A program made the translations under genes and the position numbers. Under the pieces are notes generated by a model. It searched no databases. It worked only from the letters and a program-made list of their open reading frames with translations, and was not told the origin of the DNA. Positions 22,214 to 56,694 of a DNA stretch of 64,000 nt are shown here, one piece after another (position 1 is the stretch's first letter; every line of letters starts with the position of its first letter). Source of the stretch: Podarcis liolepis (lineage: Eukaryota); assembly GCA_965112155.1 (NCBI GenBank), contig OZ218100.1. One strand, given 5' to 3'.

Positions 22214-24043
22214 TATTATGTTAAATGGTCTGCAAAAGTCATTACATTAAATAGACCATATTATGTCTCTCCTAGAGTACGCAGTTTCCCAGTGCTTGTA
22301 ATGCCAGCAAGTGTTTGTGTGTGTCTAGAACCTTTTAAGGCCTCTGAGGGGTCTTGAGCCTGAAAGTTTGTTTGAGGCCCCATCCTTCATCTTTTCCGTT
22401 AAAGGGGTTGCTTGATAACGCTGATGTGTCCTTTTCTATGCATGAAGCCTATAGCAAATGTCCCCATTAACATCCTCCCATGTGCGCATCGAGGAAAAGT
22501 ATGGGTCCCTCTGTGGACAGGCCTCAAATTCAGAGTTATGGCAGGTGATTTGCAATATGCCAGGCACAACCCGCAACCATCTGAAGGCTAGTGGAGTGGA
22601 GAGGGAAGGGCTCGTAATGTCCTGTAGGGAAGAATCCCCAGTTTGTTTATTATTTGTTTGTTTTATATTTTGCCCTTCCTCCTGATAAAATAATCAAAAC
22701 ACTAAAAAACAATTCCAGTACATGAGTAGATTAGGAAAATCTCTACCGTCACAGAAGAGGAAGGTCTTCTGTAGGCACCAAAAAGACAATGGATATGGCC
22801 CAGCAAAAGTAGCGTGGATTGTGCTGAAGTTTTTTCTGGTTTTTAAAAACATGTCTCTGAGCTTTCATGGGTCTCTGCTTAGTACGTGACAGTTCGCTGG
22901 CTCAGTTGTGATTCCAATTCCACCGTTTTAATTTTAAAACAGAAAAATCAGCACAAGAAAACTCATTAGAGAAAACAAGCAAGGCAATAAATATCACTAT
23001 TAATATTTTATTCTATGCTTCTTCAGAAATGGAAGTTACTTGGCTTGTTGCTTTATTCCTCTTTTTTGCATATGCCATTTTAATTTTACTTCTATATGTA
23101 AAGTTTATTTTTTTTATTTAAAAAAGTAAACAATTAGAGTTTACTTTTGATTACTTTCATTCATTGGGAGGCTCTTTGATATAGCAGAGGTTTCTGTAAA
23201 TGTGGTGGAGGCATTTTTTCCCTCCTACTATTTGTTGCACCACTTCCCAACTCTCAGGAGCAGATATGTGGGGTACATAAGAGTTCTAGGGGAAATTTGC
23301 CAAAATCATTTCTTTTCCCCTTCCACTCACAGAAGCCACCACTGGAGGCTGTGAATGGAATGTCAGCATTGGATATAACCAATTCTTCATAAAACTAAAC
23401 ACTTGGTTGCTTCAGCATCCGTGAATAGCTTTATTTAGGCTATAATCTCAAACACACTTAACCAGAGAGTTAGTTTCAGCGACTATAGCAGAACCTCTGA
23501 GTAAAATGCTTAGGACTGCACTCTACCCTAAATGTGCTTTGGTGCTTCCATTCTTGGTAGAACTTCAGTCTTGCCAGCTGCATTATGCATTCCATCTTCA
23601 ATGCATTTTGAGGATCATGACCTTTATGAAATCCATACGGTTGGTTTGTATGATATAACTTCATTGTTCTCTCTCCAATGAAAATAACAATACAGTGTCA
23701 TATTTTGGCCCCTAGCCAGAATTTTTGAAAGCACCCTTTTGGGAAATCGTGTTGATATATTAACAACTCATGATTTGTTTCCTGTATGAGAGTTTCCTTG
23801 AGCTAAACAAATTATGAGTCCAAGTGAGCTACAGTTGCAAAAGATACCACTTACCTGGTGATGTCATTACCATGACTCAGTCCAATTTCTGCACACATGG
23901 AACTCCTAAGAGAGAGAGGGAGATCTGTGTCCTACTTTTAATAATTTGTAGCTAATATCAACTTTACCTGAGGTCTTGTACACATAAACAATGACTCTAG
24001 TACAATAACAGATAGGTAGCCGTGTTGGTCTGCCAACATCTTC

Positions 24044-25189
24044 ATGGCAGATTTAGAACAACGTTTCCTAAACTCCTACCCACTCAAACCTCTCTTGTAC
24101 CTGCGATACATTGACGATATTTTTATCATCTGGACACATGGTCAACAGACCCTGGACACCTTTCACCAGAAATTTAATGATTTTCACCCCACAATCAACC
24201 TAACAATGAATCAATCTATGCAAGAAATACATTTTTTGGACACTACTATAAAAATACAGGATGGGCACATAGACACTACCTTATACCGTAAACCAACTGA
24301 CCGACAAACATATCTACATGCCTCTAGCTACCATCCCAAACATACCAAACAGTCCATTGTATATAGCCAGGCACTATGTTACAGCCGCATCTGTTCCAAT
24401 TCTACAGACAGAGACTCTCACCTAAGAGATCTACAGCAAACCTTTTTAGAACTAAAATACCCAGCAGATGAAGTTAGACAACAGATCAACAGAGCCAGAC
24501 TGATACCCAGAGAGAACTTGCTGCAAGACAGACCCAAAAAAGAAAATAACAGAACACCTCTAGTCATCACATACAGCTCCCAAGTTAAAACAGTACAACG
24601 CATCATCAGAGATCTACAACCTCTCCTGGACAATGACAGTTCTCTTTCTCAAGCTCTGGGAGGAAGACCTTTCATTGCCTACAGACAGCCACCCAATCTT
24701 AAACAACCCCTAACCCACAATAATACTGCAACCAGACTTAACACGGACACTGGCACCAGAGCCTGCAATAAACCCAGATGCCAACTTTGCTGCCACATAC
24801 ACCCGGACAACATCATTACTGGCCCCAACAACATCACACATACCATCTCGGGACTATTTAATTGCTCATTGTCTAACATTGTGTATGCCATCAAATGCCA
24901 ACAGTGTCTTTCAGCTCTCTATATTGGACAAACAGGCCAAACCTTACGCCAAAGAATAAACGGACATAAATCTGACATCAAGAATCACAAAACAGAGAAA
25001 CCAGTAGGAGAACACTTCAATCTCCCAGGACATTCTATACAAGATCTCAAATTAGCTGTTTTACTACAAAGGAATTTCAGAAATAGACTGGAAAGAGAAG
25101 CTGCTGAATTGCAACTCATTACCAAACTTAAAACCATGGAGAGACCTGGTCTGAACAAAGACATTGGATTCTTATCTCATTATACATGA
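24044..25189 (+). CDS. PLE polyprotein C-terminal fragment: RT palm/thumb, Cys-rich linker, GIY-YIG endonuclease (N-terminally truncated)
   Basis: 381-aa uninterrupted frame with YLRYIDDIF (RT catalytic), FLD, LYRKPT and HP motifs, a C-x4-C-x2-C linker (CNKPRCQLC, typical of the Neptune group), NIVYAIKC..C...LYIGQT (GIY-YIG), the conserved R, REAAE and a terminal GLN. Confidence 0.92.
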   Translation: MADLEQRFLNSYPLKPLLYLRYIDDIFIIWTHGQQTLDTFHQKFNDFHPTINLTMNQSMQEIHFLDTTIKIQDGHIDTTLYRKPTDRQTYLHASSYHPKHTKQSIVYSQALCYSRICSNSTDRDSHLRDLQQTFLELKYPADEVRQQINRARLIPRENLLQDRPKKENNRTPLVITYSSQVKTVQRIIRDLQPLLDNDSSLSQALGGRPFIAYRQPPNLKQPLTHNNTATRLNTDTGTRACNKPRCQLCCHIHPDNIITGPNNITHTISGLFNCSLSNIVYAIKCQQCLSALYIGQTGQTLRQRINGHKSDIKNHKTEKPVGEHFNLPGHSIQDLKLAVLLQRNFRNRLEREAAELQLITKLKTMERPGLNKDIGFLSHYT

Positions 25190-25369
25190 CTAAGCCATTT
25201 TTCACCTTCTCACCCCTTGCCTTTTCCTGTAAGACCGATTGCAGTCGTTAAGAGTCGTCAACAGGCTCATCTCAGCTATCTGCCAATCACCCATTCCCAC
25301 CACCCTTCTGAGTAATACCCCTCCCCACCTTCTCACTATATAGAAGGATCTGGCAACCTCTGTTTCAGT

Positions 25370-25407
25370 GTATCTGAAGAAGTGTGCATGCACACGAAAG
25401 CTCATAC
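25370..25407 (+). ncRNA. Minimal type I hammerhead ribozyme motif in the PLE pLTR
   Basis: GTAT (stem I 5') - CTGAAGA core (25374-25380) - A - GTGTG/CATG/CACAC (stem II) - GAAA - palindromic AGCT in place of stem III - C17 (25403) - ATAC (stem I 3'). Confidence 0.85.
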
Positions 25408-26363
25408 CAAAAACTAACTTAGTTGGTCTTTAAGGTGCTACTGGAAGGATTTTTTTTATTTTGTCTAGTACAATAAGTCTGACATGGTCTAAAAAACAGC
25501 AAAGATATTATCAAACCCTGTATAATCAACTGAGGCAGAAGCAGCCATCTGCATCAGTGGATTGTCAATGGTTTCTGCAATTCTTCACATACTTACTGAA
25601 AAGAAAAGTCCTGTAGGCTTCAATGGGACTTGTACATACGCTCAGGACTGCAGTCAAGGGAAAAAGCCTTTCATTAACTGCAGGCATGGGCTAATCTGTG
25701 CCACCATTCTTATGTGACCACATGACAGATGTTTGTGGGAAGGCAAAAACTTTGAGATAATCAGGATTACGAATTTGTTGTCGTAGGGTTTTCCCCTATG
25801 CAGAAGGAGGAATGACGCCTCCACACGTTTCACTGACGTTACTGTGAAGTGAGCTTTCCTTCCTTTATTTGACCCATGGTGGCAGCAGAGTTACAGCTGA
25901 CTGGAATCCTTTCTCTCCTCCTTGCAGGGTTTTTCAGTGCCTTTTTAGAGCAAGTATGGCAGGCACTGTGGGACATTTCCAAGAACCTCTGTGGATGAAG
26001 CACTATCTGCTTGATCTACTGGTGTTAATGGCAATTTCAGTTGTGGCATTCAGAAAATCGGGTGACATCAGAGGGCTAACCCAGTGCTACTGTCCGGGAT
26101 AAATCTCCCTCAGATCAGATCAGATTGGCTAGCTTGTTAATGGAGGGATGTCATCAGATTTTTCTCTTTGGGGCACAGAATGACTGGCCTTTTGTCCTGA
26201 CTCTTTCATGTCAGATTTCCGCCTGACTACTGCTTGCCTATCCACTCAAGATATATTTTTTTCACTTCGGGGCTTGAATACCTGACAAAAGCAGTAGGTG
26301 GGTCATGATCATGCCACCATGATCCTAAATGCCAGTTTTTCCACAGCAACAGCTTGTCATACC

Positions 26364-51729: not shown

Positions 51730-53479
51730 TTTATTTATATCCAGCCCTCCCCAGCCGAAGCTGGGCTCAGGGCGGCTAACAACAATCAAAATAGCTCAAC
51801 ATTCTAAACCATTCATTATAAAATTAATTAAATCAAATTAAAATCAAATTAATGGCAACCATCAAGCAAAATTTTGTGCAGATTGCCAGAGGAGGGGGTC
51901 AGGCTGCGCCCTGACAAAAGGCCTGGTGGAACAGCTCTGTCTTGCAGGCCCTGCGGAAGGATGTCAGGTCCTGCAGGGCCCTAGTCTCTTGTGACAGAGC
52001 ATTCCACCAGATTGGAGCCGCGGCCAAGAAGGCCCTGGCTCTAGTTGAGGCCAGCCTAACCTCTCTGAGGCCTGGGATCTTTAGGTTGTTTTTATTTGCA
52101 GACCGTAAATTTCTCTGTGGGACATACCAGGAGAGGCGGTCCCGTAGGTACGAGGGTCCTAGGCCGTATAGGGCTTTAAAGGTTAAAACCAGCACCTTAA
52201 ACCTGATCCTGTACTCCACCGGGAGCCAGTGCAGCTGGTACAGCACCGGATGGATATGATCTCGCAGCGAAGACCCCGTAAGGAGTCTCGCCGCGGCATT
52301 CTGCACCCGCTGGAGTTTCTGGGTCAGTCTCAAGGGCAGCCCCACGTAGAGCGAGTTACAATAATCCAGTCTGGAGGTGACCGTCGCATGGATCACAGTG
52401 GCTCGGTCAGGGCGAGAGAGATAAGGAGCCAACTGCTTAGCTTGGCGGAGATGAAAAAATGCCGCCTTTGTTATAGCTGTAATCTGCGCCTCCATAGAGA
52501 GGGAGGTATCGAAGATTACACCCAAACTCTTCACGGATGATGCTGGCACTAATTGCACCCCCGCAAGAGACGGGAGTTGCCCCCTCAATCCCATATCGCT
52601 CCGTCCCAGCCAGAGGACCTCTGTCTTTGAAGGATTTAACTTCAACCGGCTCCCACGTAACCATCCAGCCACAGCTTCCAGACATCTGGTCAGTGTATCT
52701 GGGGCCGAGTCAGGATGGCCATCCATCAACAGATAGAGTTGGGTGTCATCGGCATACTGATGGCAACCCAGCCCAAAACTCCGGACAAGCTGGGCGAGGG
52801 GGCGCATAAAGATGTTAAAAAGCATCGGGGAGAGAATCGCACCCTGAGGCACTCCACACACCAAGGAGTGGCGCGATAACAATTCCCCCCAAGCGCCACC
52901 CTCTGTCCCCGACCAGAGAGAAACGAGCGCAGCCATTGAAGGACTGTGCCCTGGATCCCCACGTCGGCAAGGCGGCGGTCCAGGAGTTCGTGATCGACCA
53001 TGTCGAAGGCTGCTGACAGGTCTAGAAGAATCAGCAGCCCCAACCCGCCTCGATCCAGCTGCCTGCGGAGATCATCTGTTAGGGCGACCAGAGCCGTCTC
53101 GGTCCCATGGCCAGCGCGGAAGCCGGACTGGAATGGGTCGAGAGCAGATGTTTCATCCAGAAACCTACCAAGCTGTTCAGCAACCGCTCTCTCAATCACC
53201 TTACCCAGGAATGGAAGATTCAAAACCGGGCGGTAATTGGATAGATCTAAAGGATCTAATGATGTTTTCTTTAAGAGCGGACGCACCACTGCCTCCTTCA
53301 GTTCCCCTGGGAATATCCCAGTGCCAAGGGACAAATTGATGATATCACCCAGGGGGGCCCGCACCTCGTCTGGACACGCTCTAATCAGCCAGGACGGGCA
53401 CGGGTCAAGAGGACAGGTGGTGGGCTTTCCAGCTTGGAGGAGTCTGTCCACATCGGCTGGGGACAGTTCCGGAACTTAG
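51683..53479 (-). mobile_element. L2-clade LINE, 5'-truncated, with 3' stem-loop and (ATT)n tail
   Basis: ORF2 RT motifs; 3' end GTTAGCCGCCCTGAGCCCAGC...GGATATAAATAAA followed by (ATT)n at 51683-51727 on the minus strand. Confidence 0.93.
51899..53451 (-). pseudogene. L2 ORF2 reverse transcriptase fragment with one frameshift
   Basis: Two overlapping ORFs (52726-53451 and 51899-52936) carry NYRPV, QSGFRAGHGTETAL, LLDLSAAFD, GVPQGAILSP, YADDTQLY, LKLNPSKTE, SRLDYCNSL and LHWLPV. The frame changes at the C6 run 52885-52890. Confidence 0.9.
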
Positions 53480-53724
53480 AGAGGTGCAGAATCATACAGC
53501 CTAAACAATAAAACAATTGCCTTAGAATCTATATGAAATGTTTCTTTAGATTTGGATACTGCGACAAATAATATTTTGGATATACTGAACTCCACAGTGT
53601 TTATATAGGAAGGCACTGTCGAATATAGATATAGTTACAGATAGGTAGCCGTGTTGGTCTGCCATAGTCAAAATAAAAAAATTCCTTCCAGTAGCACCTT
53701 AAAGACCAACTAAGTTAGTTCTTG

Positions 53725-53762
53725 GTATGAGCTTTCATGTGCATGCACACTTCTTCAGACAC
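53725..53762 (-). ncRNA. Hammerhead ribozyme motif, inverted copy
   Basis: Minus strand reads GTGT-CTGAAGA-A-GTGTG CATG CACAT-GAAA-GCT-C-ATAC; stems I and II are kept through G.U wobbles. Confidence 0.65.
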
Positions 53763-53898
53763 TGAAGAAGTGTGCATGCACACGAAAGCTCATACCAAGA
53801 ACTAATTAGTTGGTCTTTAAGGTGCTACTGGAAGGAATTTTTTTATTTTGACTATGGTGTATATCTGAAGAAGTGTGCATGCTCACGAAAGCTCATAC
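53762..53898 (+). ncRNA. Two tandem hammerhead cores 103 nt apart
   Basis: CTGAAGA at 53762 and 53865, each followed by stem II, GAAAGCTC and ATACC. Copy 1 lacks the stem I 5' strand; copy 2 has one stem II mismatch (CTCAC). Confidence 0.65.
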
Positions 53899-54121
53899 CA
53901 AGAACTAACTTAGTTGGTCTTTAAGGTGCTACTGGAAGGAATTTTTTTATTTTGAATATAGATATAGATATAGTTGGAGGGGTAATGCTGAACATTTCTT
54001 GTTGAGGCATATGATGTGGGCTTGTCCAGTGATATAGTCTCTTTGGTCTGAAGTTCTTGTCTGTATCAATTTTGTATTGGCACAATCCTTGAAGTTTGTA
54101 GGTGTCAGTCTATGTTCATGT

Positions 54122-54378
54122 GAGAGCCAGTGTGGTGTAGTGGTTAAGAGCGGTAGTCTCGTAATCTGGTGAACCGGGTTCGCGTCTCCGCTCCTCCACA
54201 TGCAGCTGCTGGGTGACCTTGGGCCAGTCACACTTCTTTGAAGTCTCTCAGCCCCACTCACCTCACAGAGTGTTTGTTGTGGGGGAGGAAGGGGAAGGAG
54301 GATGTTAGCCGCTTTGAGACTCCTTAAAGGGAGTGAAAGGCGGGATATCAAATCCAAACTCTTCTTCTTCTTCTCTTC
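54122..54378 (+). mobile_element. Squam3-like (Ther1/MIR-derived CORE) SINE
   Basis: A box TGGTGTAGTGG, B box GGTTCGCGTCT, CORE GGGTGACCTTGGGCCAGTCAC, L2-like 3' end, (CTT)n tail, TSD TTCATGT (54115-54121 / 54379-54385). Confidence 0.85.
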
Positions 54379-56054: not shown

Positions 56055-56503
56055 CTTTCGCAGGTGCTTTAGGGTGTCCACCAGGCCAGACAATTCTGTC
56101 TCCACCGCAACTGCCACCTGCAATACTTGCCAATTGTGCCCAAATTCAGAAGCCAGTCGGTGGAGTGAGCCCACCATACTTAGAGAGTATGGCAGAAAAA
56201 CGTGTAGCTTAGGGCAATTATGGGAGACACTCAAAAATTCCTATTCAGTCCCCTTTAAACAGGCAAGTGGCTAATCCCATACTCCTTGGAGAAAGGGTCT
56301 GGTGGAGGAGAGGATGTCCTAGGGACAAGGGGAGCCCTGTCCATTCTACTGAGCATGCTCAAGCCTGGTTCCACCACATCTTCCTTCCTTTGCTGAGGGG
56401 CTAGGGCAAACCCACCACCAGTGAATGCTGGAGGAGTACTCTAATTTTGGCACATGGCAGAAATTATAGTGTTGTTAGGTTCATAAGGACGGAGCCATAA
56501 CAA

Positions 56504-56694
56504 GGGCTGTAGCTCAGTGGTAGAGCACCTGCCTTTCATGCAGGAGATCCCAGGTTCAATTCCTGGCGTCTCCACATCGGGTGGAGATTGTGCCCTGTAT
56601 AAAATCATGGTTAGTTGCTGGGAGTCAGTGCAGATATATTCATCTAGATGGACCAATGGTCTGACCTGGTATAAGACAGCTTTCTATATTCCTA
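56504..56694 (+). mobile_element. tRNA-derived SINE with CR1-like 3' tail
   Basis: GGGCTGTAGCTCAGTGGTAGAGC A box, GGTTCAATTCC B box, followed by body and GATGGACCAATGGTCTGACC tail. Confidence 0.8.

What the first reader, a model, noticed from the sequence alone, without database searches (positions are those of the whole stretch)
53637..53954. ORF-less insertion built only from three ribozyme-bearing repeats (retrozyme-like)
Seen: a ~318-bp TSD-flanked insertion with no coding sequence, made of one inverted and two tandem direct pLTR units. Predicted cleavage sites on the + strand are C53791 and C53894, 103 nt apart. Established: tandem hammerhead-containing non-autonomous repeats (retrozymes) are proposed to be mobilised by PLEs, and tandem copies let minimal hammerheads dimerise in cis. 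Inference: this is either a member of a non-autonomous ribozyme-only family driven by the Neptune element 28 kb away, or a one-off extreme 5' truncation with template jumps. Caveats: copy 1 has lost its stem I 5' strand and copy 2 has a stem II mismatch, so release of a 103-nt monomer or circle from this locus is uncertain.
Basis: partly seen in the sequence, partly recalled or inferred. Interest (0 to 1): 0.8.

Follow-up and report, generated by a model that had tools for sequence, protein, structure and literature searches.

The report
Abortive Penelope-like retroelement mini-insertion
This 317-bp ORF-less insertion is real, but it is most likely an ordinary dead-on-arrival fragment of a very abundant Penelope-like retrotransposon, laid down in the inverted-plus-tandem way already described for that class, and not a new ribozyme-only mobile element.

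Summary
Window 53638-53954 has no ORF and sits between 13-15-bp target-site duplications in an (ATATAG)n microsatellite. It consists of three 96-103-nt copies of the 3' end of a Penelope-like element (PLE): one inverted, two direct. Each copy carries a minimal type I hammerhead motif. The predicted cut sites, C53791 and C53894, are 103 nt apart as stated.

Published work describes every feature seen here: 5' truncation, partial tandems, an adjacent inverted copy, a one-sided 30-40-nt "tail", AT-rich or microsatellite targets, priming on both DNA strands, and two internal RT start sites.

The module is in more than 16,000 contigs per genome in two lizard species. At most 1% of RNA reads carrying it fit this architecture, and no read ends pile up at the ribozyme sites. 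A transcript of the whole insertion is predicted to fold into a ~95-bp hairpin that buries one ribozyme.

The "Neptune element 28 kb away" is itself 5'-truncated and cannot be the driver. I could not count the two junctions genome-wide, so a small family is not excluded. Earlier notes of this scan record similar mini-insertions of other sizes elsewhere in this genome.

The parts
53622..53636 (.). Left copy of the target-site duplication (AATATAGATATAG + TT). A53637 is ambiguous: it may be the last tail base or an extra base.
   Evidence: family D4
53638..53668 (-). PLE 'tail' (31-32 nt, ACTATGGCAGACCAACACGGCTACCTATCTG on the minus strand). It is the extension beyond the usual 3' end, present in full only on the inverted copy.
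   Evidence: The same 27-28 nt lie at 24009-24035. Other genomic copies carry the tail in direct orientation after the 3' end (loose ends at 53850).
53669..53761 (-). Inverted copy A of the PLE 3' module, including 3 nt (TGT) of upstream PLE context. Minimal hammerhead core at 53758-53729, H17 = 53729, helix I 4 bp (one G.U), stem II closed by G.U (CpG to TpG at 53737).
53762..53857 (+). Direct copy B (53762-53850) plus the first 7 nt of the tail (ACTATGG, 53851-53857). Hammerhead core 53762-53791, H17 = C53791, no helix I. A 1-nt deletion (CTAA-TTAG) is rare among other copies.
53858..53954 (+). Direct copy C: 7 nt of upstream PLE context (TGTATAT) plus the module at 53865-53954. Hammerhead core 53865-53894, H17 = C53894, helix I 3 bp, stem II mismatch at T53883. 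It ends at the usual 3' terminus ...TTTTATTTTG without a tail.
53955..53975 (.). Right copy of the target-site duplication, inside an (ATATAG)3 microsatellite with one extra ATATAG unit.
24009..25463 (+). Second, independent insertion of the same PLE family: inverted tail 24009-24035, body 5'-truncated inside the RT domain, ORF 24044-25189 with a CX4CxxC linker and GIY-YIG, hammerhead 25374-25403, TSD TCTAGTACAATAA at 23996-24008 and 25464-25476. It is the reference for the native context of the module. It is not a possible driver.

Best explanation
This is one abortive retrotransposition event of a Penelope-like element, probably of the Neptune type.

Inferred mechanism: the element's protein cut both strands of an AT-rich (ATATAG)n target 13-15 bp apart, and both 3' ends primed reverse transcription on PLE RNA at its internal start sites.
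- On one strand, synthesis began at the usual site (...TTTTATTTTG) and made copy C. It stopped 7 nt upstream of the hammerhead, then jumped to a new start 7 nt into the tail and made copy B.
- On the other strand, synthesis began at the distal start site, which explains the full 31-32-nt tail, and made the inverted copy A.
- The two short cDNAs were joined at the natural near-palindrome TTCAG...CTGAA just upstream of the ribozyme core.

The three hammerhead motifs are passengers. They lie about 59 nt upstream of the RT start site in every copy of the element. The locus has no ORF and lacks the native sequence 3' of the tail, so it is most likely dead on arrival.

Shown: the anatomy, the shared module and tail, the TSDs, the abundance of the module, and the absence of RNA support. 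Inferred: the order of priming and template jumps.
For: Anatomy matches the published description.
- A single TSD pair encloses [inverted tail + inverted copy][direct copy + 7 nt of tail][7 nt of upstream context + direct copy].
- PMC8557442 describes this as typical of PLE insertions: strong 5' truncation, partial tandems, an adjacent inverted 5'-truncated copy, a 30-40-bp tail at one end only, and a microsatellite bias.

Mechanism is published for an anole PLE.
- PMC11167929 shows that the protein cleaves and extends both strands at AT-rich DNA, and that RT starts at two internal RNA sites with the roughly 34-nt tail between them.
- There the ribozyme cut site lies about 55-59 nt before the first start. 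Here the distance from C17 to the module end is 59 nt, and the tail is 31-32 nt.

A second insertion in the same window (24009-25463) has the same inverted tail, the same 3' terminus and a 13-bp TSD, but a different truncation point.

The junctions retain full-length context. TGT, TGTAT and TGTATAT match ...CAGTGTATCTGAAG of the long copy. Junction J1 falls on a 5-nt CTGAA/TTCAG microhomology.

The three copies share one haplotype. They carry the same alleles at five sites that vary in the family (module positions 30, 38, 42, 57, 85) and differ only by one rare and two commoner changes (table 3).

Abundance and RNA.
- The module lies in 20,460 contigs of X1 and 16,317 of X14, with summed depth around 1e6 against 50-250 in the flanks.
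- RNA reads mostly run on into full-length PLE context: 282 reads with consensus ...GGATCTGGCAACTTCTGTTTCAGTG.
- At most 11 of 1211 reads fit the stretch entirely.
- No pile-up of molecule ends was reported.

Folding: the whole transcript forms a roughly 95-bp hairpin at -185 kcal/mol. A hammerhead-dimer-competent fold costs +44.5 kcal/mol for the whole transcript, or +12.8 kcal/mol for copies B and C alone.
Against: - The decisive count of loci carrying junction J1 (53753-53767) or J2 (53851-53870) could not be made. Logan contigs break at repeats, and no eukaryotic genome collection is searchable here.
- At 53760, depth equal to roughly 16 single-copy equivalents carries the window's base in both DNA runs. 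A handful of J1-like junctions elsewhere is therefore not excluded.
- The RNA evidence comes from another species (organism I) and one library.
- No listed contig bridges an insertion boundary, so presence or absence in other individuals or species, and the empty site, are unverified.
- The need for RNA sequence 3' of the tail is taken from a different PLE clade (Poseidon PAc).
Confidence: 0.78

Rival explanations
1. The locus is a member of a recurrent non-autonomous family that carries only ribozyme repeats, that is, a minimal non-LTR retrozyme. Its tandem units would be transcribed, cut by dimerising hammerheads into ~103-nt monomers or circles, and copied back into DNA by PLE reverse transcriptase.
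For: - Two head-to-tail units with minimal HHR cores, no ORF, low GC and a TSD longer than 4 bp.
- The locus has what the operational screen for vertebrate non-LTR retrozymes looks for. That screen reports consensus lengths of 51-972 bp (mean 176 bp in reptiles) and derives such elements from PLE pLTRs.
- The module is extremely abundant and transcribed.
- For PAc, the shortest active RNA template starts near the ribozyme.
Against: - Unit boundaries are the PLE RT start sites and a truncation point, not the ribozyme cleavage/ligation site.
- The junctions hold remnants of long PLE RNA.
- Copy B has no helix I, and copy C has weakened helices I and II.
- The inverted copy locks copy B into a ~95-bp hairpin.
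- At most 1% of RNA reads with the module fit the architecture, and no ends lie at the cut sites. The same absence was reported for PAc.
- Earlier scan notes list mini-insertions of many different sizes and arm lengths, not one recurrent form (unchecked leads).
Confidence: 0.12
2. The locus started as a simpler head-to-head PLE hairpin insertion (A plus one direct copy). The second direct copy arose later by local duplication (unequal crossing-over or replication slippage) or by a second PLE insertion into the first.
For: - PLEs are reported to nick their own pLTRs as well as other AT-rich DNA.
- Tandem growth of pLTR-derived repeats by unequal crossover is proposed in the 2026 preprint.
Against: - The sequence upstream of copy C (GGTGTATAT) is not a copy of what lies upstream of copy B (CAGACA). 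It matches native PLE context, so C is not a duplicate of B with its surroundings.
- No second TSD flanks copy C. One TSD pair encloses everything.
- B and C share the family haplotype and differ by only two changes.
Confidence: 0.05
3. The near-perfect 95-bp inverted repeat has been taken up by the host as a hairpin-RNA or small-RNA source directed against this PLE family.
For: - The hairpin is very stable: -185 kcal/mol, z = -23.
- Generic matches to long plant/animal miRNA-precursor models appear at E of 1e-14 to 1e-5, all below their gathering scores.
Against: - Those Rfam matches are what any long perfect hairpin gives, and none reaches its threshold.
- There is no evidence that this locus is transcribed: the unique flanks have zero RNA depth in the one library laid.
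- No conservation data are available.
Confidence: 0.03

Closest known systems
5'-truncated tandem/inverted insertions of endonuclease-positive Penelope-like elements (Neptune and Penelope/Poseidon clades), as described by Arkhipova and co-workers (PMC8557442) and reconstituted in vitro for Anolis carolinensis Poseidon PAc (PMC11167929)
   Same: - Single TSD in AT-rich or microsatellite DNA.
- Extreme 5' truncation.
- Partial tandem.
- Adjacent inverted copy.
- One-sided ~32-nt tail.
- Minimal hammerhead about 59 nt upstream of the RT start site.
- No RNA ends at the ribozyme site.
   Different: - The family differs from PAc. The ribozyme sequence is different. The module lies after the ORF's stop rather than overlapping the start codon.
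- The EN linker carries CX4CxxC, a Neptune/Nematis hallmark that is absent from Poseidon.
- The truncation is unusually extreme, about 100 nt per copy, so nothing but the ribozyme-bearing 3' module is left.
[quoted passage not shown]
   Same: - Type I topology.
- Short helix I (4 bp).
- An unpaired base at the 5' end of a long stem II.
- Helix III reduced to a palindrome (AGCU), which implies action as a dimer.
- Pairs of motifs 100-700 bp apart on opposite strands were already noted in that paper.
   Different: No activity data exist for this variant. Two of the three local copies carry damaging changes.
Metazoan non-LTR retrozymes (Cervera and de la Pena 2020, PMC7229834; Li, Clavereau and Pollet 2026, bioRxiv 10.64898/2026.07.22.740005)
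   Same: - ORF-less head-to-tail repeats that carry type I hammerheads.
- Low GC.
- TSD longer than 4 bp.
- Sequence derived from a PLE pLTR.
   Different: - Only 1.9 units of 103-104 bp, against the typical 150-450 bp.
- Minimal rather than canonical ribozyme, without loop-loop contacts.
- An inverted third copy.
- No evidence of a family with this unit structure or of linear or circular monomer RNA.
- Unit borders are RT start and truncation points.
Twin-priming inversions of LINE-1
   Same: Both target strands prime cDNA synthesis, which gives a 5' part inverted relative to the 3' part, joined at a microhomology.
   Different: In L1 the two parts come from different segments of one RNA. Here both strands start at the same 3' module, which produces a palindrome.

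Membership tests
Penelope-like element insertion (EN+ PLE) | Sequence identity to the terminus of an element that encodes a PLE RT and a GIY-YIG endonuclease | tested here: met
   The module is 94-96% identical to 25364-25467, the 3' end of the copy whose ORF has YIDD-type RT motifs, a CX4CxxC linker and GIY-YIG (Pfam PF01541, E = 1.4e-5).
Penelope-like element insertion (EN+ PLE) | Characteristic architecture: 5' truncation, partial tandem, adjacent inverted copy, and a 30-40-bp tail at one end only | tested here: met
   against the description in PMC8557442.
Penelope-like element insertion (EN+ PLE) | Target-site duplication in AT-rich or microsatellite DNA | tested here: met
   A 13-15-bp TSD in (ATATAG)n. 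The second copy has a 13-bp AT-rich TSD.
Neptune clade of PLEs | CX2-5CxxC Zn-finger-like linker upstream of the GIY-YIG domain (absent in Penelope/Poseidon); placement in an RT phylogeny | tested here: inconclusive
   The motif C-NKPR-C-QL-C is present in the ORF at 24044-25189 (criterion). It is shared with Nematis, and no phylogeny was made.
Minimal PLE hammerhead ribozyme (min-HHR) | Core CUGANGA...GAAA...UH, stem II, short helix I, palindromic mini-helix III | tested here: met
   Descriptor scan. All three copies have the core. Helix I is 4 bp (A), 0 bp (B) and 3 bp (C). Stem II is intact, wobble-closed or mismatched.
Minimal PLE hammerhead ribozyme (min-HHR) | Self-cleavage at H17, as a dimer and/or with protein help | not testable with these tools
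   There is only indirect negative evidence: no pile-up of RNA read ends at the sites (table 6), and an unfavourable predicted fold.
Canonical hammerhead (Rfam Hammerhead_1/3/HH9/HH10/II) | A match to an Rfam covariance model | tested here: not met
   No hammerhead family at the gathering threshold or at E<=10.
Metazoan non-LTR retrozyme | ORF-less head-to-tail tandem repeat with at least two consecutive units that carry a type I HHR | tested here: inconclusive
   TRF finds period 104, 1.9 copies, and both units have the core. The first unit lacks helix I. The motif is the minimal type, not the canonical type with loop contacts that PMC7229834 requires.
Metazoan non-LTR retrozyme | A multi-copy family with the same unit structure at independent loci | not testable with these tools
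   No searchable copy of this genome. Contigs break at the repeat. Upper bound for J1-like junctions: about 16 copy equivalents out of roughly 1e4. Metagenome scans were blank and uninformative.
Metazoan non-LTR retrozyme | Expression as linear and circular monomer RNA with ends at the ribozyme site | tested here: not met
   In the one raw-read RNA library, from a related species, at most 11 of 1211 reads fit the architecture and no ends pile up. This is a weak test: another species and no circRNA-specific library.

The most novel reading that the evidence does not exclude
Extremely truncated tandem PLE insertions like this one could be the birth stage of vertebrate non-LTR retrozymes. In that reading this locus, or close copies of it, would release a ~103-nt hammerhead-bounded RNA (A53792 to C53894) that is circularised and re-mobilised by PLE reverse transcriptase. 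That would be the smallest retrozyme unit known with a traceable parent element.
Probability: 0.05. Interest if true: 0.6.

Novelty: already known. Interest (0 to 1): 0.2.

Why it matters
As it stands, the locus is a clean, well-delimited textbook example of what PLE integration leaves behind, and it sits next to a second insertion with the same ends. It illustrates, in a family other than PAc, the geometry inferred in vitro for the anole Poseidon element: two RT start sites 31-32 nt apart, a ribozyme 59 nt upstream, and priming on both strands. It is also a caution for retrozyme screens. A pipeline based on tandem repeats plus minimal-HHR motifs may well count such abortive PLE insertions as 'active retrozymes'. 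It would matter more only if the junctions proved recurrent or a ~103-nt RNA were found.

Tried and rejected
- Rfam at the gathering threshold and at E<=10 gave no hammerhead family. The only matches were to miRNA-precursor models below threshold, which I take as generic long-hairpin hits.
- Two metagenome-contig scans found nothing: one for any short-spacer head-to-tail junction of the module and one for the plain ribozyme core. The second blank shows the collection holds no DNA of this kind, so the first blank says nothing.
- Full-text search for the ribozyme and tail sequences found no paper.
- The search of earlier findings by sequence was blank.
- The 241 'joints' were considered as evidence for variable junction positions. 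Most have sides of only 21-26 nt at 90% likeness, and the module has an internal palindrome (AACTAA-C-TTAGTT). I do not rest anything on them.
- I tried to read presence or absence of the insertion in other runs. The flank contigs stop at 53625 and 53631 on the left, and start at 53957 and 54011 on the right. None of the listed pieces bridges the insertion, so this is unresolved.
- Comparison with Poseidon_Ac was by eye only, and showed a different ribozyme sequence and layout.
- Post-insertion duplication and nested independent insertions were rejected on junction content and the single TSD pair.

Full report
**What is there**

Window 53638-53954 (317 bp, or 318 with the ambiguous A53637) is a discrete insertion. 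On the + strand it reads, in order:
- 53638-53668: a 31-nt stretch whose reverse complement continues the 3' end of the next unit. This is the "tail".
- 53669-53761: an inverted copy (A) of a ~90-nt module, plus 3 nt.
- 53762-53850: a direct copy (B), followed by the first 7 nt of the tail (ACTATGG, 53851-53857).
- 53858-53864: TGTATAT.
- 53865-53954: a second direct copy (C), ending ...TTTTATTTTG.

The copies are 96-100% identical to each other. TRF calls 53762-53959 a period-104 array of 1.9 copies.

The insertion lies between AATATAGATATAG at 53622-53634 and at 53955-53967. The duplication reaches 15 bp if one extra ATATAG unit is allowed. The target is an (ATATAG)n microsatellite. Nothing longer than 50 aa is open wholly inside the insertion.

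**The module is the 3' end of a Penelope-like element**

The same module, 94-96% identical, ends a longer insertion at 24009-25463. That copy has:
- its own 13-bp TSD, TCTAGTACAATAA;
- the same 27-28-nt tail in inverted orientation at its left end;
- an ORF (24044-25189) that begins inside the RT domain (..FMADLEQ..RYIDDIF..) and carries a C-x4-C-x2-C linker and a GIY-YIG domain.

The linker motif is the hallmark of Neptune/Nematis and is absent from Penelope/Poseidon (PMC8557442). This copy is 5'-truncated and cannot be the driver of anything.

**The ribozyme motifs**

My descriptor scan finds the minimal type I hammerhead only at four places in 64 kb: 25374(+), 53762(+), 53865(+) and 53758(-). 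Shuffles give 0.235 sites on average. The motif consists of:
- CUGAAGA;
- one unpaired A;
- a 5-bp stem II (GUGUG/CACAC) with a CAUG loop;
- GAAA;
- the palindrome AGCU in place of helix III;
- C17.

[quoted passage not shown] The Rfam hammerhead models do not match, even at E<=10.

- Copy B has no helix I.
- Copy C has a stem II mismatch at T53883. About 98% of the depth from other genomic copies reads A there.
- Copy C's helix I is only 3 bp.

The inverted copy on the minus strand is actually the best preserved. Its helix I has 4 bp, and its stem II is closed by a G.U pair that arose from a CpG-to-TpG change.

**How the architecture arose (inference from published mechanism)**

PMC8557442 describes as typical of PLE insertions: strong 5' truncation, partial tandems, an adjacent inverted 5'-truncated copy, a 30-40-bp tail at one end only, and a microsatellite bias.

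PMC11167929 gives the mechanism for an Anolis carolinensis PLE:
- The protein cuts and extends both DNA strands at AT-rich sites.
- Reverse transcription starts at two internal sites on the RNA, and the ~34-nt tail is the stretch between them.
- The ribozyme cut site lies about 55-59 nt before the first start.
- Ribozyme mutants insert normally.
- No RNA-seq reads end at the ribozyme site.

The geometry here is the same: 59 nt from C17 to the module end, and a 31-32-nt tail.

I therefore read the locus as one event:
- Copy C was primed at the proximal start site on one strand.
- A template jump then landed 7 nt into the tail and gave copy B.
- Copy A was primed at the distal start site on the other strand.
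- The two cDNAs were joined at the natural near-palindrome TTCAG-TGTAT-CTGAA, which precedes the ribozyme in the long copy.

Both junctions keep pieces of long-RNA context: TGT, TGTATAT, and 7 nt of tail. This argues against a later duplication of B. It also argues against templates that were ribozyme-bounded monomers.

The three copies share the same alleles at five sites that vary within the family, and differ only by a CpG transition, the change at T53883 and a rare 1-nt deletion (table 3). That fits one source and a moderate age.

**Family or one-off?**

I could not count the junctions genome-wide, because no eukaryotic genome collection is available and contigs break at the repeat.

Two DNA runs of two species were laid at 90% likeness.
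- The module is in 20,460 contigs in one and 16,317 in the other. Summed depth is about 1e6, against 50-250 in the unique flanks.
- At 53760, inside J1, total depth drops to about 31,000 (X1), and 95% of it carries the base of the full-length context. The remainder equals roughly 16 single-copy equivalents. This is an upper bound for J1-like junctions.

One raw-read RNA run of a related species was also laid.
- 1200 of 1211 reads fit only partly.
- 282 reads run on into full-length PLE context upstream of 53862.
- At most 11 reads fit the stretch entirely. Any 151-nt read from a locus like this must cross a junction.
- No pile-up of molecule ends is reported anywhere, including the predicted cut sites.
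- The unique flanks have zero RNA depth.

Folding predicts that a transcript of the whole insertion forms a ~95-bp hairpin at -185 kcal/mol. Forcing the B-C dimeric helix III costs +44.5 kcal/mol for the whole transcript, or +12.8 kcal/mol for a B+C-only transcript.

By analogy with PAc, which needs about 50 nt of RNA beyond the tail, none of the three copies keeps the native downstream sequence. Re-mobilisation is therefore unlikely. That step is an inference across clades.

Earlier notes of this scan (unchecked leads) list mini-insertions of this PLE elsewhere in the genome. Their sizes are 207, 226, 237, 302, 429, 518, 615 and 848 bp, with arms of different lengths. One follow-up reached the same "abortive hairpin" verdict. 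This pattern fits variable abortive events better than one fixed family.

**Comparison with retrozymes**

Metazoan non-LTR retrozymes are ORF-less tandem repeats of about 150-450 bp. [quoted passage not shown] A 2026 preprint uses an operational screen, TRF plus canonical or minimal HHR motifs in at least two consecutive units. It finds consensus lengths of 51-972 bp and derives these elements from PLE pLTRs.

This locus has the tandem repeat and the two minimal-HHR cores that the screen looks for. Whether copy B, without helix I, would count there as a complete motif is unknown. The stricter features are not shown: a canonical ribozyme, a family with this unit, and monomer or circular RNA. 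It is retrozyme-like in form only. Even the optimistic reading would be a variant of an idea already in print.

**Verdict**

The locus is an ordinary, already described kind of object, of low interest, with about a 5% chance of being a nascent minimal retrozyme.

The species is a lizard according to an earlier scan note, and run organisms are coded, so I did not establish the species myself.

Noticed in passing
window 24009-25463: A 5'-truncated PLE copy (1,455 bp) with a 13-bp TSD (TCTAGTACAATAA), an inverted 27-28-nt tail at its left end, and an intact-looking C-terminal ORF with a CX4CxxC linker and GIY-YIG. In its native context, UUCAG-UGUAU-CUGAA forms a small hairpin that sequesters the CUGA of the ribozyme core.
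   Followed up: partly
window 53850 onwards, in other genomic copies (loose ends): In other copies of the family, the tail follows the 3' end in direct orientation: 34 contigs in X1, consensus ..GACTACGGCAGAC... The tail is therefore not restricted to the inverted orientation, as a neighbouring first-stage note on this window (s1-843644) suggested.
   Followed up: partly
window 53400-53471: The left flank holds the end of another high-copy repeat, with summed contig depth of 1e5-3e5 in both DNA runs. It is also present in RNA reads. I did not identify it.
   Followed up: no
window 54120-54200 and 56503-56575: A tRNA-like SINE head (GCCAGTGTGGTGTAGTGGTTAAGAGCGG...) starts about 165 bp right of the insertion. 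A tRNA-Glu(TTC) gene or SINE-derived copy scores 63.6 bits in Rfam and is also called by ARAGORN.
   Followed up: no
window 53631-54011 versus run X14 (organism I): The single-copy flank contigs of the second species stop aligning at 53631 on the left and start at 54011 on the right. The insertion's presence there is unresolved, and the microsatellite region may differ between species.
   Followed up: partly
window 53791 / 53729 equivalents, family-wide: The cleavage-site base C17 is U in about a quarter of the summed contig depth of the family (table 3). The CpG at C11.1-G12 is often decayed to TpG. Many genomic ribozyme copies are therefore altered at functionally relevant positions.
   Followed up: no
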